Below, piece by piece: positions 22,990 through 31,607 of a DNA stretch of 64,000 bases. The translations under genes were made by a program, and so were the position numbers. The stretch covers positions 124,001 through 188,000 of IMG/VR virus record IMGVR_UViG_3300046171_000231; one strand, given 5' to 3'. The notes beneath the pieces are model-generated. The model made no database searches and was not told the origin of the DNA. It saw only the letters and a list, made by a program, of their open reading frames with translations. Every line of letters starts with the position of its first letter. The first letter of the stretch is position 1.

Positions 22990-23160
22990 TTATATTGATA
23001 TTCCTTTTTCTTCACGCAGTATTTTTTTGTAAGGTCCGTCAGGGTTGTTATCTCTAACATCTTTGACTTCTTTCAGTAAATGATACAATCGTGCATCTCC
23101 TCCAAGAGAAAGAGCATTTACGATTGTTTCTAAATCGTTATCATTAATAGGTAATTCCAT
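22990..23160 (-). CDS. Small hypothetical protein (56 aa)
   Basis: MELPINDNDLETIVNALSLGGDARLYHLLKEV...; TAATG overlap with the gp43 stop. Confidence 0.6.
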   Translation of the reverse strand: MELPINDNDLETIVNALSLGGDARLYHLLKEVKDVRDNNPDGPYKKILREEKGISI

Positions 23161-25661
23161 TAGGAAAAAAATAGTTCTAAGTTTACAGTTTTTTCAACAT
23201 TCCACCCAATTGCATCTAAGATTGTTCTGAGTGGTTCAACAAAACTTTTGTCAAATTGTAAGTCGTAATCGACATACTTTTCAAGGTCAAGTTCTCTAGG
23301 AAAATCTTGAATGAATGATATTACATTCTCTTGAATAATATTTGGTTTTTTCAAATAGAGAAATTTGACCTTTTCTCCATTTCCAATAAGTGAGTACTTA
23401 TTATCAATCTTTTTCGCTTTAACATAATGATTAAACAATAATGCACCCCGTATATGTATAGGAGTTCCCTTTGCATAAATCGTAGAAGTCGCTTTATACT
23501 TCTGAACATTTGATGCAGTGCGAGGAAAAGCAATCTCTTCTGGTGGTAGCTTTTTGAATTGTTTTCTGGACTCATCAATAAATTCAATGACATCTTCTTC
23601 AGTGCCATTCATCATCAACTTGAGTGCACTTTTAATTAATGCACGACAAGGTGCAGGAGTTGAAGATTTAACTGCTTCAATACCCATCATCTTGAGATTT
23701 GGTTTTTCATATCGAACACCTTCACTATCCCACACATTTAAAATATATCTTTTCTTTGCTGTCCAGATGCCACGGTCTGCGATATTCTCTCGCTTCATAA
23801 ACATCTTTTGATCATAAGCATTTACGTAGTTCGCCAACGTTTCATAAGAACTCGTAATATACTTCTCAAGTTCCATTTCACAGATCTTATTAAGGAACGA
23901 CACAATGCTTTGATTAGTCGTCTCTCTCCCTTTGTATACAGTTTCGACCAAAGGACCAAGATTAAGGTAGATGGAATCAGTATCGCTGGCAATAACATAG
24001 TCTTCACCCTCCGTTTTGAGTATTTTGTTTAAGTATGCATTCATTTTGTTTTCTATCCAACGAATAGAAACCTGCCCTGATAAGGTAATTGCTTCCGCAT
24101 TTGCTAATTTGTAATAGCGGAAGTATTGATTACCAATCGCACCATAGGCAGAGTTAAGAGAAATCTTCTTTGCCATCTGGATATTATTGCAACGGGCAAT
24201 CTCTTTAGTCAGTTCAACTGTAGGAGTTTTTTCATATGCTTTCTTTGCCTTAATCATCCTCTTCTTGAAGATGACCCTTTCATTATACATCTTCTCCATC
24301 AGCTCTGGTAAGAAACCACGAACATCCTTTCGATACATTGCACCATTTGCACAAACAGCATTTTCTTTGTACATCTCAAAAGTCAAATCTTCATTAAGAA
24401 TTTTATCAACCGTAACAGAAGGATGTCTTGTATCTAATAAAGTTTCTGGTGAAATATTGTATTGCATAATCAAATGCGGATATAGACTATTCAAGTCAAA
24501 TGATACTACCCAATCATATTTGCCAGGTATTGGTTCTTTTACATATGCACCTGCATACTTATCATTTTTATGTGACCTATTCTTTGGAGGTATAACAATA
24601 TTTCTTCTCTTCAAATAATTGTAGATAATCGTATCCCACATTCTTACCTGATAAAATACATCTTCATAGTTGACCTTCGCATCATATGCCATTGTCAATG
24701 CAAGCTCAATCAACTTCATCTTGTCCTCAAGACGGTCAACAAGTTCCACGTCAATGATGTTATATTCTACAAACTTTTGCCATCCTTGAGTATAGAAGTC
24801 TTTGAATGTATCAAATTCTGAGTGGTCAAGTTTCTTTTGTCCAAGTTCAACAGATGCAATATAATCTAATCGATATGACTCTTGTGCCTTATAAGTAAAC
24901 TTCTTATATAAGTCAAGATAATCTAACTGCGATACACCACCAATATCATAAGAAATTTGTTTACGACCCATTATATGAGTTTCTTCTTCAGTTACGAGAC
25001 CCCAAGGTGACATTCTCTTCTTAAGTTTCTCACCAAGTATTCTGTCAATACGACGACAGAGATATGGAATATCATAAAACTTACTATTCCAACCAGTGAT
25101 AACTTCTGGTGTATTATCTTCAATCATCCACCAGTTGATGAAATCTGTTAGAAGTTCATATTCTGTAGTGAATGATTTATAAGTAACATTCTCTTGCTTA
25201 TTATTAAATGCACCAAGACCCCAAGTGCGTATTTGTTTTGTTGTATAATCTTGTAATGAGATAAGTAATATTTCTTCTGCAGCAGATTCTACATCAGGGA
25301 ATCCATATTCTGATTTAACCTCAATATCAATTGTAGTTAATTTAATTCTTTCAATATCAAACTTTAATTCTTGCTCTGGATATTTGTCCGAAATATATTG
25401 ATAGATAAATCTTTCATTACCATAGATGTTAAAGTTTTCAACCTCATTATAATTTTTAATAAAGTCTCTACATTCACGAACTGTACCAGGTTCAATTGGT
25501 TCAACGGGCAAACCGTCAAGTGTTTTATATTTTGTCTTTCTTTTTGAATCTACAAATAATGTTGGATAGAACTTTTCACGAGTAGCAAAGTGCTTTCCAT
25601 CTTCATATCCACGAACCAAGAAATTATCTCCGACCATTTGGACGTTGGTATAAAATCTCAT
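23160..25661 (-). CDS. gp43: Family B DNA polymerase (T4 gp43)
   Basis: Exonuclease DIE; SFDLNSLYP, KISLNSAYG and ASDTDS motifs. Confidence 0.98.
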   Translation of the reverse strand: MRFYTNVQMVGDNFLVRGYEDGKHFATREKFYPTLFVDSKRKTKYKTLDGLPVEPIEPGTVRECRDFIKNYNEVENFNIYGNERFIYQYISDKYPEQELKFDIERIKLTTIDIEVKSEYGFPDVESAAEEILLISLQDYTTKQIRTWGLGAFNNKQENVTYKSFTTEYELLTDFINWWMIEDNTPEVITGWNSKFYDIPYLCRRIDRILGEKLKKRMSPWGLVTEEETHIMGRKQISYDIGGVSQLDYLDLYKKFTYKAQESYRLDYIASVELGQKKLDHSEFDTFKDFYTQGWQKFVEYNIIDVELVDRLEDKMKLIELALTMAYDAKVNYEDVFYQVRMWDTIIYNYLKRRNIVIPPKNRSHKNDKYAGAYVKEPIPGKYDWVVSFDLNSLYPHLIMQYNISPETLLDTRHPSVTVDKILNEDLTFEMYKENAVCANGAMYRKDVRGFLPELMEKMYNERVIFKKRMIKAKKAYEKTPTVELTKEIARCNNIQMAKKISLNSAYGAIGNQYFRYYKLANAEAITLSGQVSIRWIENKMNAYLNKILKTEGEDYVIASDTDSIYLNLGPLVETVYKGRETTNQSIVSFLNKICEMELEKYITSSYETLANYVNAYDQKMFMKRENIADRGIWTAKKRYILNVWDSEGVRYEKPNLKMMGIEAVKSSTPAPCRALIKSALKLMMNGTEEDVIEFIDESRKQFKKLPPEEIAFPRTASNVQKYKATSTIYAKGTPIHIRGALLFNHYVKAKKIDNKYSLIGNGEKVKFLYLKKPNIIQENVISFIQDFPRELDLEKYVDYDLQFDKSFVEPLRTILDAIGWNVEKTVNLELFFS

Positions 25662-25909
25662 TACGCAGTTAGTTCAGTATATTTGTCCTTAATTGTACCA
25701 TTTGGGTCTGCAATCGTCAATATATCTTCAGCACGAATCATAAACTCTGTTTGATTTGTAATATCTGCTTTCCAAGGCTTCATATCATCAATACCATTAT
25801 AGACATATGGTTTGATTAGTTTACAATTAGGATCACCCAATTGAGCATCTACTTCTACAATCTCTGTAATCAAAGTACAGTGAGCATTTAACATTACACA
25901 TTTAATCAT
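25661..25909 (-). CDS. Hypothetical protein (Sm-like beta fold)
   Basis: Resembles the adjacent upstream ORF; coupled to the gp43 start. Confidence 0.6.
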   Translation of the reverse strand: MIKCVMLNAHCTLITEIVEVDAQLGDPNCKLIKPYVYNGIDDMKPWKADITNQTEFMIRAEDILTIADPNGTIKDKYTELTA

Positions 25910-26249
25910 CTTCTTCTTCCTCTTCTTCCTTCATTTCAAAAGTCTTCAATTTATCTAGGTATAATTGAGTTACTGAATTAAGCGGTTCAACAACAGTTAA
26001 TACACTATCTACAGGTATTATCATTTGGGTATCTTGAGATAATATTATCCACGGTAGTAAAGTAACATTAATACCAAAGTCACCATCTTTCTTTTCTTCC
26101 TCAGTCATAAATTGTTTTTCATTTATCTCAACTGTATGAGGATTTTCAAGTAAGTATGCTTGTGGTTCATCTTTTCCCTCTGCAGATAATTCTTTCATTT
26201 CTGAAATTAATTGCTCACCAGTTTTAAGTAAAGTAAGTTTGATTGACAT
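25902..26249 (-). CDS. Hypothetical protein (Sm-like beta fold)
   Basis: MSIKLTLLKTGEQLISE...LLENPH...PWIILS pattern. Confidence 0.65.
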   Translation of the reverse strand: MSIKLTLLKTGEQLISEMKELSAEGKDEPQAYLLENPHTVEINEKQFMTEEEKKDGDFGINVTLLPWIILSQDTQMIIPVDSVLTVVEPLNSVTQLYLDKLKTFEMKEEEEEEDD

Positions 26250-26265
26250 TTTTCTATCTAATTAA

Positions 26266-26323
26266 CTGGTAGATTCCTATAGCCGCTTATGCTGAACCTA
26301 CCAAAGGGCATAACCGCAGCCAG
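26266..26323 (-). ncRNA. Putative H-type pseudoknot in a 5' leader
   Basis: UUAUGC/GCAUAA stem crossed by a 10-bp helix UGGUAGGUUC/GAAUCUACCA; the G-U pairs are only valid on the minus strand. Confidence 0.65.
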
Positions 26324-26341
26324 TATTTCTCTGACAAATAT

Positions 26342-26370
26342 ATTATAGCACAACTTTTCCAATTGTCCAA
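26342..26370 (-). promoter_or_regulatory. Sigma70-type promoter overlapping the purM 3' end
   Basis: TTGGAC-17 nt-TATAAT with an extended -10 TG. Confidence 0.6.
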
Positions 26371-27275
26371 CTTTTATATCCAAATGCATCTATTGTATCG
26401 TGAGTATCAATTTCACTTTGCTCTGGTATTACCACACAATACCCAATACCAAGATTAAAAACTTTTTTCATTTCCTCTTCTGGTATCTCACCTGCTGACA
26501 TTATCTTTTGAAATATTTTAGGTAACGGCCAAGAATTATAATCAATATCTGCCTTTAATCCATCAGGTAAACATCGTGGTAGATTCTCTGGAATACCACC
26601 CCCAGTAATATGTGCCATACCTAATATAGGAACTTCATTTATAAGTTCCATTACAAGTGGAGCATAGATATGAGTTGGTGTTAAAAGTTTTTTCGTTGCT
26701 TTTAATTTTTTCTGTCTTATTAAATGATTAACTAAACTGTAACCATTGCTATGAATACCACTACTTTCGATTCCGATTATAAGGTCTCCTTCTTGAATAA
26801 TTGAACCATCAATTATTTCAGATGACTCAACGATTCCTGTACTAAATCCTGCGAGGTCAATATCAAAAGTCATTGGATGTTCAGCAGTTTCACCACCAAT
26901 AAGTTCAACACCTGCTAACTCACAACCTTTAATGATACCTGTCATAATATCATCTACAACAGGGTTTATTGTGTTTAGAGAAATGTAATCTAAAAAATAT
27001 AAAGGTTTTGCACCACAAGTAATAATATCATTGACACACATTGCAACCAAGTCAATACCTATAGTTTTATAGTTATCTAAACGATTACAAATACAAATCT
27101 TTGTTCCAACTCCATCAGTACCAGAAACTAAAATAGGTTCCTCATATCCACGAGGAACCTTATACATACCACCGAATCCACCGATGGTAGGTACTTTTTG
27201 TTTTAGTCTTTCAACGAAAGCATTACCTGCTTCAATATCAACACCCGATGATTTATAGGTAGTTTTTTCTTGCAT
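26343..27275 (-). CDS. purM: Phosphoribosylformylglycinamidine cyclo-ligase (AIR synthetase)
   Basis: YKSSGVDIEAGN, GTDGVGTK, MCVNDI, GGETAE, HSNGYSL and HITGGG motifs. Confidence 0.95.
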   Translation of the reverse strand: MQEKTTYKSSGVDIEAGNAFVERLKQKVPTIGGFGGMYKVPRGYEEPILVSGTDGVGTKICICNRLDNYKTIGIDLVAMCVNDIITCGAKPLYFLDYISLNTINPVVDDIMTGIIKGCELAGVELIGGETAEHPMTFDIDLAGFSTGIVESSEIIDGSIIQEGDLIIGIESSGIHSNGYSLVNHLIRQKKLKATKKLLTPTHIYAPLVMELINEVPILGMAHITGGGIPENLPRCLPDGLKADIDYNSWPLPKIFQKIMSAGEIPEEEMKKVFNLGIGYCVVIPEQSEIDTHDTIDAFGYKSWTIGKVVL

Positions 27276-27687
27276 GATGTTCTGGAACTATCTTACCCAA
27301 TTTGACGGTAAGTAATCCATCTTTAAATAGAACCTCTCTGACTTCAATATCTTCTGATAGTGACCAGGTTCTGTTGAAAGATCTCTGAGCCAGTCCTTGA
27401 TAGACATACTCGGATTCTTTCTCTTTTTCTTTTTTCTTTCCTTCAACAATAAGTTTTCCATATTCAGTATAAACATGAAGTTCATTTTTACTAAATCCTG
27501 CTAATGCTATTTCTAGTATTGATTCAACATTATTTACGTGAATAAGATTGTAGGGTGGATAGTTTGTTGCGGTTTCGTAAGAATTGAAAAAATTATCTAG
27601 GTATGAGTCCATACCAATTCCATTCTTAGAAATAATCTTCATTAGTTCTGGAAGATTAGCAGAGTGATACTTCTGTAGTGAAGTCAT
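27253..27687 (-). CDS. hsp20: Small heat shock protein (Hsp20/IbpA-like)
   Basis: NYPPYNL, LEIALAGF, GLAQRSFNRTW and DGLLTV alpha-crystallin motifs. Confidence 0.93.
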   Translation of the reverse strand: MTSLQKYHSANLPELMKIISKNGIGMDSYLDNFFNSYETATNYPPYNLIHVNNVESILEIALAGFSKNELHVYTEYGKLIVEGKKKEKEKESEYVYQGLAQRSFNRTWSLSEDIEVREVLFKDGLLTVKLGKIVPEHHARKNYL

Positions 27688-27830: not shown

Positions 27831-28020
27831 AAAAAAGGAGGGAGGTTGGGTTCCTGTGTACCAACAAAAGATGGGCATTACTACAGAGTAAATACATCTT
27901 TGCCTGAGACCCGACTGGTAAGTCGATTCTGACTCGCATCAGCAGCACCACCTGTGTCTCATCACCTTAACCAGCGATTGCCAGTAAGTTTATTCAGTCA
28001 CTCCCATTGTTGCGTCCAAC
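27831..28020 (-). ncRNA. manA: Probable manA RNA motif
   Basis: GC-rich, structured ~190-nt intergenic RNA (GGGAGUGACUGAAUAAACUUACUGGC...GGUGAUGAGACACAGGUGGUGCUGCU...CCUCCC). Matches my recollection of manA and its known ibpA/hsp20 context; not confirmed by a covariance-model search. Confidence 0.7.
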
Positions 28021-28026
28021 AATATA

Positions 28027-28060
28027 AGTATAGCATAAAAAAAGGAGGTGTCAACCCTCC
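28027..28060 (-). promoter_or_regulatory. regA terminator with overlapping sigma70 promoter driving manA
   Basis: GGAGG-GTTGACA-CCTCC-T7 hairpin; TTGACA-16 nt-TATACT with TG extension. Confidence 0.7.
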
Positions 28061-28491
28061 CCTTCTTCTTTCTTCTTTTTAGCACCAATATTGTATTTCG
28101 TTTCTAAAATCCATTCACCTTTATCTTTAAATGATAACACTTTGATTTGATTAAGTGGTGCAATGTCCTGTATACGAACTACATCGACCACACCAACCAA
28201 TCCCCAATCAGCAAGAAGCTGAGCAATACGATTGCGACGCTGAACATCGTTAGAAGTAAGGTTAGCGTGTTTCCCGTCAAGAGCAAAAAGTTCTTTAAAG
28301 TGGACAAGATAGTACCTCCCTTGCTTATGAAGTATGTGACAACTTTGATATATTTTCTTTTCTTTCCTACTTGCTACACCAATTCTTGTGAGAGTTTCTC
28401 TGACTTTCAGGAAATCATCTGGTTCATTCAATGTTACCTCCACCATTTGGTCGGGAGACCATGTGACGACAGGTTCTTTAACAACACTCAT
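28051..28491 (-). CDS. regA: Translational repressor RegA
   Basis: DFLKVRETLTRIG...QSCHILHKQGRYYLVHFKELF. Confidence 0.95.
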   Translation of the reverse strand: MSVVKEPVVTWSPDQMVEVTLNEPDDFLKVRETLTRIGVASRKEKKIYQSCHILHKQGRYYLVHFKELFALDGKHANLTSNDVQRRNRIAQLLADWGLVGVVDVVRIQDIAPLNQIKVLSFKDKGEWILETKYNIGAKKKKEEGEG

Positions 28492-28857
28492 TTCGCTCCT
28501 CCAGTATCAAATTTAGATTTTATAAAGTTGAGTTGTTTTTTTGTCAGAATTTTTAAAGCTTGTTTTGCTTTTTCGTTACTATAACCATAATAACGTTTTA
28601 CATAATCAAGGTCTTTAATCATATCCTTACGAAGCCAAGGAGAGAATCTCTTCTTAGTTCTGAGAGTATTTATATAAAAGTCGTATTGCATACGCTTTGG
28701 TAAGAAATTATACTTATTCATTTCGTTTGCAAAAAGGACTGCATCTAAGTGTCCAGAGAAACAACGATTAATAATATATGGAGGATAATCTTTCTCTACT
28801 AAAGGGTCTTCATCTATTAAATTTTTCTTTGTTTGGTTGATTGAATTTAACCAATCT

Positions 28858-28868
<11 letters not shown>
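28488..28868 (-). CDS. gp62: Clamp loader small subunit (T4 gp62)
   Basis: [11 protein letters not shown]...YPPYIINR...QYDFYIN...RFSPW; probable true start at 28868. Confidence 0.88.

Positions 28869-31607
<2,739 letters not shown>

What the first reader, a model, noticed from the sequence alone, without database searches (positions are those of the whole stretch)
26250..26370. Unassigned H-type pseudoknot/switch heading the transcript that leads to DNA polymerase
Minus-strand RNA CUGGCUGCGGUUAUGCCCUUUGGUAGGUUCAGCAUAAGCGGCUAUAGGAAUCUACCAG. Stem UUAUGC/GCAUAA (extendable by GGCUGC/GCGGCU) has a loop that pairs over 10 bp with GAAUCUACCA. The extended lower stem and the pseudoknot look sterically competing, as in a switch. 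It begins ~15 nt after a predicted TSS and ends 16 nt before an AU-rich, SD-less start, two short ORFs upstream of gp43. It resembles the T4 gene 32 pseudoknot operator in layout. I could not match it to a riboswitch or ribozyme I know.
Basis: partly seen in the sequence, partly recalled or inferred. Interest (0 to 1): 0.75.

Follow-up and report, generated by a model that had tools for sequence, protein, structure and literature searches.

The report
Portable pseudoknot RNA of cyanophages

Summary
The window comes from a 236-kb T4-like cyanophage close to P-SSM2. On the minus strand a host-type promoter (-10 at 26347-26342) fires at about G26335. The RNA starts with hairpin P1 (26335-26319). 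Then come UGCGG and hairpin P2 (26313-26287). The P2 loop pairs over 9 bp with 26276-26268, which makes an H-type pseudoknot.

About 90 distinct homologues in viral metagenomes and named cyanophages show strong compensatory covariation in P1, P2 and the pseudoknot. No Rfam family matches.

The extension of the lower stem is not conserved, because its GG belongs to P1. The tenth pseudoknot pair is also unsupported.

There is exactly one copy in each of nine carrier genomes searched whole. Five other cyanomyovirus genomes have none, and a strict consensus pattern found none in 185,579 prokaryote genomes.

What follows the RNA varies. It can be tRNA-Arg or tRNA-Pro 2-5 nt downstream (31 of 100 loci), unrelated ORFs 14-23 nt downstream, or a hairpin and a second promoter. 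Only 11 of 80 loci encoding a close gp43 relative carry it.

My best reading is an autonomous, early-expressed structured RNA that acts through its fold. Its function is unknown. It is a well-supported new RNA family.

The parts
26364..26369 (-). -35-like hexamer TGGACA, inside the 3' end of purM
   Evidence: Promoter scan gives TGGACA-16-TATAAT, 11 of 12 matches, with TG before the -10. A -35-like hexamer is found at 16-18 nt in 63 of 88 homologues.
26342..26350 (-). Extended -10 (TGcTATAAT). The purM stop codon TAA (26345-26343) lies inside the hexamer.
   Evidence: 88 of 92 distinct homologous upstream regions have a -10-like hexamer, and 54 have the TGn extension.
26319..26335 (-). P1: 5'-terminal hairpin GUCAG-AGAAAUA-CUGGC. 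G26335 is the predicted +1.
   Evidence: In 71 of 88 homologues a helix of 5 bp or more starts exactly 6 nt after the -10 hexamer and ends at the C of CUGCGG. There are 24 distinct stem sequences. P1 is also part of the MFE fold.
26314..26318 (-). Junction UGCGG. Together with C26319 it forms the near-invariant CUGCGG.
   Evidence: 47 of the 48 distinct homologues found with the loop-only pattern read CUGCGG (the other reads CUGCGA), and that pattern did not fix this stretch. Possible pairing of CUGC with GCGG never varies, so it is untestable.
26287..26313 (-). P2 hairpin: UUAUGC (26313-26308) paired with GCAUAA (26292-26287), with a 15-nt loop CCUUUGGUAGGUUCA
   Evidence: Five of the 6 pairs change on both sides in class A and all 6 do in class B. 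99.8-100% of cells are paired. P-SSM2 carries a compensatory GC-to-CG change.
26294..26302 (-). 5' strand of the pseudoknot, GGUAGGUUC, inside the P2 loop
   Evidence: Covaries with 26268-26276. Variant pairs seen: GGUGG/CCACC, GGCAG/CUGCC, GCUAG/CUAGC, GACGG/CCGUC, AGUGG/CCACU.
26277..26286 (-). Linker GCGGCUAUAG, near-invariant (GCGGCKAUAG in the family)
   Evidence: 45 of the 48 distinct homologues found with the loop-only pattern carry it unchanged.
26268..26276 (-). 3' strand of the pseudoknot, GAAUCUACC
   Evidence: 4 pairs change on both sides in each class. The G-U pairs (18 GU at one position) fit only this strand.
26250..26267 (-). A+U-rich spacer AGUUAAUUAGAUAGAAAA before the ATG of the first DUF6561 ORF (25902-26249)
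   Evidence: This stretch is not conserved among homologues. The ATG lies 14-23 nt after the pseudoknot whenever an ORF follows directly.

Best explanation

**How it is made (inferred).** A host sigma-70-type promoter with an extended -10 starts transcription at G26335. This promoter is of the type thought to drive early cyanophage genes (my knowledge; timing not tested here). The first base is already paired in hairpin P1.

**Structure (shown by covariation).** P1 is followed by UGCGG and then hairpin P2. Nine bases of the 15-nt P2 loop pair with the 3' tail across a 10-nt linker, GCGGCUAUAG. The result is a compact H-type pseudoknot with more than 20 near-invariant unpaired or junction bases.

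**Behaviour as a unit (shown).** The promoter and RNA travel together and sit in front of whatever gene comes next.

**How it most likely works (inferred).** It acts as an autonomous RNA through its folded shape, by binding a protein or a small ligand. It does not act by controlling one particular downstream gene.
- Where a tRNA follows 2-5 nt downstream, RNase P would release it as a discrete RNA.
- In this window it starts the DUF6561-DUF6561-gp43 transcript. Here it may be cut off in the A+U-rich spacer, or stay as a base-paired 5' end.
For: **Structure.**
- Covariation supports P2 and the pseudoknot in two size classes. RNAalifold agrees.
- P1 is defined independently by the promoter on one side and the core on the other, and has 24 stem variants.

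**Constraint.** The element is 93-96% identical to P-SSM2, P-SSM5 and AG-345 viruses, while the adjacent purM is only about 68% identical.

**Autonomy.**
- One copy was found in each of nine carrier genomes searched whole: the window's own genome, P-SSM2, two IMG/VR genomes, S-SM2, ACG-2014f, S-SKS1 and Bellamy.
- Syn9, S-PM2, P-SSM4, P-HM2 and S-RSM4 have no copy, yet they are T4-like cyanophages too. So the element is dispensable for core phage functions.
- What follows is unrelated from locus to locus: tRNA-Arg or tRNA-Pro at 2-5 nt in 31 of 100 loci, and many different ORFs.
- In 15 loci the next ORF has its own promoter.
- In 7 distinct loci a conserved hairpin UGCCAG..CUGGCA follows the pseudoknot.

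**Mode of action.** The unpaired conserved bases lie in junctions, and the P1 loop varies. That fits recognition of shape better than an antisense seed.
Against: - No transcript data were available. The start site, a discrete RNA species and its stability are all inferred.
- No intrinsic terminator follows the element in most loci. It is therefore also the leader of the downstream RNA, and a role in cis cannot be excluded.
- No partner protein emerged from the gene co-occurrence test, which returned only lineage markers.
- The near-constant spacing to the next ATG (14-23 nt) could reflect a role in cis rather than tight packing.
Confidence: 0.45

Rival explanations
1. It is a generic 5' leader module that acts in cis. 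The base-paired +1 and the compact pseudoknot would protect the transcript from decay that depends on the 5' end (RNase E, RNase J, pyrophosphohydrolase). Alternatively the nascent RNA would modify the transcribing polymerase, as HK022 put RNA does, so that it reads through pauses and terminators.
For: - P1 starts exactly at the predicted +1 in 71 of 88 homologues.
- The element always lies directly after a promoter and on the same strand as the downstream genes or tRNAs.
- No terminator separates it from them in most loci.
- In many loci a hairpin followed by a T-run precedes its promoter, so it opens a new transcription unit.
Against: - There is a single copy per genome of 190-250 kb, although these genomes have many early transcription units.
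- Related phages with the same kinds of genes lack it.
- A simple stabiliser would not need more than 20 invariant junction bases.
- Next to a tRNA, RNase P would cut the RNA off the transcript, which undoes any tethered effect on the polymerase.
- In 15 loci the next ORF has its own promoter.
Confidence: 0.25
2. It is a riboswitch or a protein-bound translational operator that controls the downstream DUF6561-gp43 operon. It would resemble the T4 gene 32 pseudoknot operator, possibly with two competing folds.
For: - In the window the pseudoknot is followed by 17 nt of unstructured A+U-rich RNA and a start codon without a Shine-Dalgarno sequence.
- Direct ORF starts lie 14-23 nt after the pseudoknot.
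- In one locus, L180, the downstream ORF is gp32 itself.
- The many invariant bases look like an aptamer.
Against: - Downstream genes share no pathway, and a third of loci have a tRNA 2-5 nt away with no room for an expression platform.
- Only 11 of 80 loci encoding a close gp43 relative carry the element.
- The phage's own gene 32 is more than 100 kb away.
- The proposed competing lower stem is not conserved.
- The start codon and spacer are not paired with the element and are not conserved.
Confidence: 0.08
3. It is a small self-cleaving ribozyme of a new class.
For: - It has a compact pseudoknotted fold of 50-70 nt with many invariant unpaired bases.
- It lives in phages and often lies next to tRNAs.
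- Small ribozymes share these traits (my knowledge).
Against: - It matches no ribozyme family in Rfam.
- Nothing conserved lies beyond the pseudoknot that could hold a cleavage site.
- Cleavage at the 5' end would have little point at a transcription start.
- RNase P already explains processing next to tRNAs.
Confidence: 0.05

Closest known systems
T4 gene 32 mRNA pseudoknot operator
   Same: Both are H-type pseudoknots at the extreme 5' end of a phage transcript. In this window the pseudoknot is followed by unstructured A+U-rich RNA up to the start codon. One homologue, L180, really does sit upstream of a gp32 gene.
   Different: - This element has an extra 5' hairpin and no sequence likeness to the T4 operator.
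- It is not linked to gene 32 in this genome, which lies more than 100 kb away, nor in 99 of 100 loci.
- It abuts tRNAs in a third of loci.
T4 small stable RNAs, species 1 and 2 (rnaC, rnaD)
   Same: Both are small structured phage RNAs of unknown function that share a transcription unit with tRNA-Arg and lie within a few bases of it (T4 annotation). In 25 of 100 loci the cyanophage element lies 2-5 nt upstream of tRNA-Arg(UCU).
   Different: - The T4 RNAs lie downstream of the tRNA and are 119 and 139 nt long.
- The covariance model finds nothing significant in the T4 region (best E 0.29).
- In this window no tRNA is nearby.
HK022 put RNAs (polymerase-binding antiterminator RNAs)
   Same: Both are structured RNAs of about 70 nt encoded directly after a promoter, and they act whatever genes follow (my knowledge of put).
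   Different: put consists of two stem-loops without a pseudoknot, and it occurs after each of two early promoters. Here there is one copy per genome. No antitermination target was identified, and no homology was tested.
manA and wcaG RNAs (Rfam RF01745, RF01761)
   Same: These too are conserved structured RNAs of T4-like cyanophages and marine metagenomes, found in the same variable genome region. A manA RNA lies 1.5 kb upstream in this window. The downstream gene classes partly overlap: nucleotide synthesis and mannose metabolism (PMC2864571).
   Different: The fold and size differ, and no model matches. manA and wcaG are not reported next to tRNAs. This element is fused to its own promoter.

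Membership tests
Any Rfam 15 family | Covariance-model match at the gathering score | tested here: not met
   In the whole window only manA reaches its gathering score, at 27835-28022. At E<=10 over 26150-26450 there are only two chance snoRNA matches.
T4 gene 32 translational operator | Lies in the 5' leader of gene 32 | tested here: not met
   The downstream ORF is DUF6561. The phage's own gp32 starts near G000:44,970 and the element is at 150,267-150,335. Only 1 of 100 loci (L180) has gp32 downstream.
T4 gene 32 translational operator | 5'-terminal H-type pseudoknot followed by an unstructured A+U-rich tract that reaches the ribosome-binding site | tested here: inconclusive
   Met in the window. 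Not met in the 31 loci where a tRNA starts 2-5 nt after the pseudoknot.
T4 gene 32 translational operator | Bound cooperatively by gp32 | not testable with these tools
   This needs a binding assay.
Metabolite riboswitch | Conserved aptamer supported by covariation | tested here: met
   Searches show the covariation. Searches show more than 20 invariant bases.
Metabolite riboswitch | Consistent association with genes of one pathway | tested here: not met
   Downstream are tRNA-Arg, tRNA-Pro, DUF6561, DUF7212, purM, purH, peptide deformylase, phosphomannomutase, gp32, a 2OG-Fe oxygenase and unknown ORFs.
Metabolite riboswitch | Expression platform: a terminator or anti-terminator, or sequestration of the ribosome-binding site | tested here: not met
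   Only 2-5 nt separate the element from tRNAs. Only 11 of 92 distinct downstream regions have any hairpin within 25 nt, four of those lie inside a tRNA, and none has a U-rich tail. The spacer and ATG are unpaired and not conserved. The competing stem is not conserved.
Metabolite riboswitch | Binds a ligand | not testable with these tools
   This needs in-line probing or ITC.
PeSL-type mobile promoter/stem-loop cassettes of T4-type phages | Several near-identical copies per genome flanking variable genes | tested here: not met
   Exactly one match in each of nine carrier genomes searched whole.
T4 rnaC/rnaD small stable RNAs | Likeness in sequence and structure | tested here: not met
   Model R1 over the T4 tRNA region with filters off gives a best E of 0.29, and that match lies inside a tRNA gene.
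tRNA or tmRNA | Recognised by ARAGORN | tested here: not met
   No tRNA or tmRNA is found in the window.

The most novel reading that the evidence does not exclude
The family is a new functional class of phage RNA whose fold does biochemical work. It could be a new ribozyme. It could be an RNA that binds and reprograms a host machine such as RNA polymerase, a ribonuclease or a defence protein. Or it could be a ligand sensor that works without a classical expression platform. In each case it would be delivered early in infection from its own promoter and, in many phages, released by tRNA processing.
Probability: 0.2. Interest if true: 0.85.

Novelty: new variant of a known kind. Interest (0 to 1): 0.62.

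Why it matters
Marine T4-like cyanophages are among the most abundant viruses in the ocean, yet only a handful of their non-coding RNAs are known (manA, wcaG, PhotoRC-II, glnA, CfrI). Several properties make this family a good subject for experiment:
- It has unusually clean comparative support, with three covarying helices including a pseudoknot.
- It has more than 20 near-invariant unpaired bases.
- It has its own strong host-type promoter and a single copy per genome.
- It appears to be found only in viruses.
- Cultured hosts and phages that carry it already exist: P-SSM2, P-SSM5, S-SM2, S-SKS1, ACG-2014f and Bellamy.

Its fusion to tRNA-Arg or tRNA-Pro at a fixed spacing of 2-5 nt suggests that phages use tRNA processing to release a second RNA product. 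The same idea could help explain the T4 species 1 and 2 RNAs, whose function is, to my knowledge, still unknown.

For annotation there are two lessons. The element should be marked in these genomes, where it is unannotated or overlaps dubious small ORFs. It should also not be read as a regulator of gp43 or purM.

Tried and rejected
1. **Rfam.** Both the gathering-score scan and the permissive scan found no family.
2. **Single-sequence folding.** The result is not significant, z = -0.70. The claim therefore rests on comparative data only.
3. **BLAST of the 800-nt region.** Only purM matched. The short element had to be searched on its own.
4. **The 14-mer scan.** About half of its hits were chance matches, and I filtered them by the flanking motifs.
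5. **Ascertainment bias.** The first pattern fixed the loop and the second fixed the junctions. I therefore judged each region only on the set that left it free.
6. **MAFFT alignment with P1.** It misaligned P1 and the two size classes. I counted the pseudoknot per class, and tested P1 by anchoring it on the promoter.
7. **T4 rnaC/rnaD homology.** None found.
8. **Cellular homologue.** A strict 24-base pattern found none in genome contigs. A looser scan would have drowned in chance hits, so I did not run one.
9. **Partner protein by gene co-occurrence.** I compared six genomes that carry the element, including the window's own, with five that lack it. Only nucleotide-sugar enzymes, tail-fibre proteins and a glycosyltransferase-like protein of 254 aa came out. 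These mark the lineage and are not partners.
10. **The 43-aa ORF at 26258-26389 that overlaps the element.** Rejected as a gene, because homologues differ by indels of 1-2 nt and vary by paired changes.
11. **Opposite-strand RNA.** Rejected, because the frequent G-U pairs would become C-A mismatches.
12. **Literature.** I found no description of this element. The catalogue of 10,006 viral candidate RNAs (PMC10690425) may contain it, but its tables are not held.

Full report
**Setting.** The window is bases 124,001-188,000 of a complete 235,761-bp virus record. The genes on the minus strand mark it as a T4-like cyanophage. In order they are:
- a clamp-loader subunit
- RegA (28051-28491)
- a manA RNA (27835-28022, 188 bits)
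- Hsp20 (27253-27687)
- PurM (26343-27275)
- the element
- two DUF6561 ORFs (25902-26249 and 25661-25909)
- family-B DNA polymerase gp43 (23160-25661)

Among named phages, the closest copies of the element are in P-SSM2 and P-SSM5.

**The observation.**
- Folding this sequence alone is not impressive. The z-score is -0.70.
- The 69-nt stretch is 93-96% identical in P-SSM2, P-SSM5 and two single-cell virus assemblies. The adjacent purM is only about 68% identical.
- In P-SSM2 the element lies between hsp20 and a different gene.
- Even the five-sequence alignment shows a compensatory GC-to-CG change in the hairpin stem.

**Collecting the family.** I ran two exact-pattern scans of IMG/VR. One was anchored on the loop and the other on the junctions. 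After filtering they gave about 90 distinct true homologues. All share one plan:
1. A sigma-70-type promoter.
2. Six bases later, a hairpin P1 of variable sequence and length.
3. UGCGG.
4. A 6-bp stem P2 of variable sequence around a conserved loop.
5. GCGGCKAUAG.
6. A 3' strand complementary to the loop.

There are two size classes. The window belongs to the longer one, with a 9-bp pseudoknot. The shorter class has 8 bp.

**Structure tests.**
- On ungapped alignments made per class, P2 and the pseudoknot are paired in 97-100% of cells.
- Nine to ten pairs change on both sides, and no shuffle reaches the observed covariation score.
- Pairing collapses to 20-53% when the partner columns are slid.
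- Pseudoknot variants include GGUGG/CCACC, GGCAG/CUGCC, GCUAG/CUAGC, GACGG/CCGUC and AGUGG/CCACU.
- RNAalifold finds the pseudoknot helix unaided.
- P1 was tested without folding. In 71 of 88 homologues a helix of at least 5 bp runs from the base 6 nt after the -10 hexamer to the C of CUGCGG. There are 24 different stems.
- The first transcribed base is therefore predicted to be paired.
- The many G-U pairs fit only the minus strand.

- The tenth pseudoknot pair is unpaired in 24 of 49 sequences.
- The two outer pairs of the lower-stem extension can form in only 12 of 58 sequences, because those bases belong to P1.
- CUGC/GCGG never varies, so it can be neither supported nor rejected.
- With P2 at 6 bp and a 10-nt linker, an ordinary H-type geometry needs no switch. 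This last point is inference.

**Identity.** No Rfam 15 family matches. ARAGORN finds nothing. I built a covariance model of the 53-nt core.
- It finds exactly one copy in each of nine carrier genomes searched whole. These are the window's own genome, P-SSM2, two IMG/VR genomes of 231 and 207 kb, S-SM2, ACG-2014f, S-SKS1 and Bellamy.
- It finds none in Syn9, S-PM2, P-SSM4, P-HM2 or S-RSM4.
- BLAST adds S-B05, S-B43, RB11-B, S-H68, SynMITS9220M01 and S-SCSM2R.
- The element is annotated in none of these records. In a few, an annotated CDS or tRNA lies over the match.
- A strict 24-base pattern finds nothing in 185,579 prokaryote species genomes.

**Context.**
- In 31 of 100 distinct loci a tRNA starts 2-5 nt after the pseudoknot, most often at 4 nt. 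It is Arg-UCU in 25 loci and Pro-UGG in 6.
- Elsewhere an ORF starts 14-23 nt after the pseudoknot. These include DUF6561 (24 loci), purM, purH, peptide deformylase, phosphomannomutase, one gp32 and several unknowns.
- In 15 loci the next ORF is a conserved 73-aa protein with its own promoter. In 7 distinct loci a conserved hairpin UGCCAG..CUGGCA comes first.
- Only 6 of 75 newly fetched loci encoding a close gp43 relative, plus 5 fetched earlier, carry the element.
- The phage's own gene 32 is more than 100 kb away.

**Interpretation.**
- A gene-specific riboswitch or operator is unlikely. The downstream genes share no pathway, and next to tRNAs there is no room for an expression platform.
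- A generic promoter cassette or universal 5' stabiliser is hard to square with one copy per genome and with absence from related phages.
- The pattern fits a small autonomous RNA gene fused to its promoter. It would act through a conserved fold and be released by RNase P where a tRNA follows.
- This is inference. No expression data were available.
- A role in cis, as 5'-end protection or put-like modification of the polymerase, remains a serious rival. A new ribozyme is a minor one.

**Search for a partner.** I compared the window genome's own ORFs with five other genomes that carry the element and five that lack it.
- Fourteen ORFs were present in all carriers and in no non-carrier.
- Those that could be named are nucleotide-sugar epimerases, tail-fibre or baseplate proteins, and a very conserved glycosyltransferase-like protein of 254 aa.
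- These reflect lineage and gave no RNA-binding lead.

**Known relatives by analogy only.**
- *T4 gene 32 pseudoknot operator.* The layout is similar, but membership fails.
- *T4 rnaC and rnaD, next to tRNA-Arg.* The context is similar, but the model finds no match.
- *HK022 put RNA.* The position after a promoter is similar.
- *manA and wcaG RNAs of cyanophages.* They share the same genome region (PMC2864571).
- *Catalogue of 10,006 viral candidate RNAs (PMC10690425).* It may list the element, but I could not check this.

**Verdict.** The structure is real and strongly supported, and it belongs to no named family. The proposed switch and the proposed link to gp43 or purine metabolism are not supported. 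The function is unknown. I rate it a good candidate for experiment.

Noticed in passing
window 27835-28022 (-): A full-length manA RNA (RF01745, 188 bits) lies between regA and hsp20-purM. It fits the published association of manA with ibpA-type chaperone and nucleotide-synthesis genes.
   Followed up: partly
window 28858-30120 (-): A 420-aa ORF matches the C-terminal domain of glycine dehydrogenase (glycine cleavage P-protein; GcvP2_C, E 1.6e-43). It overlaps the clamp-loader ORF at 28488-28991 by 134 nt. To my knowledge this is an unusual auxiliary gene for a cyanophage.
   Followed up: no
window 25661-26249 (-): Two DUF6561 ORFs of 115 and 82 aa lie in tandem directly upstream of gp43. DUF6561 is also the most common ORF downstream of the element in other loci.
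   Followed up: partly
window 27135-27160 (-): An 11-bp G+C-rich hairpin followed by a T-rich run looks like a terminator. It lies about 115 nt inside the purM coding sequence.
   Followed up: no
L185:2010-2560 (+): The tRNA-Arg-like sequence after the element seems to break off after the D-arm. An ORF of 153 aa rich in cysteine pairs follows. This may be an interrupted or intron-bearing tRNA gene.
   Followed up: no
L007, L010, L017, L032, L139, L142 and L171, the 10-40 nt after the pseudoknot: A conserved hairpin UGCCAG-loop-CUGGCA without a U-tail is followed by a second TTGAC...TATAAT promoter and a conserved 73-aa ORF that begins MALTEKFK. The hairpin may be a 3' domain or a processing site of the RNA in that lineage.
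   Followed up: partly
G000:C1:227050-227814 (-), outside the window (L421): A 254-aa protein (phrog_1574, weakly glycosyltransferase-like) is 75-89% identical across the five other genomes that carry the element. tBLASTn (E <= 1e-4) does not find it in the five genomes that lack the element.
   Followed up: partly
L019, L031, L046, L060 and many others, the 30 nt before the -10 hexamer: In many loci the sequence CGATCCCTTTTTTT, which looks like a terminator tail, runs straight into the element's promoter. In the window that position is taken by the 3' end of purM.
   Followed up: no
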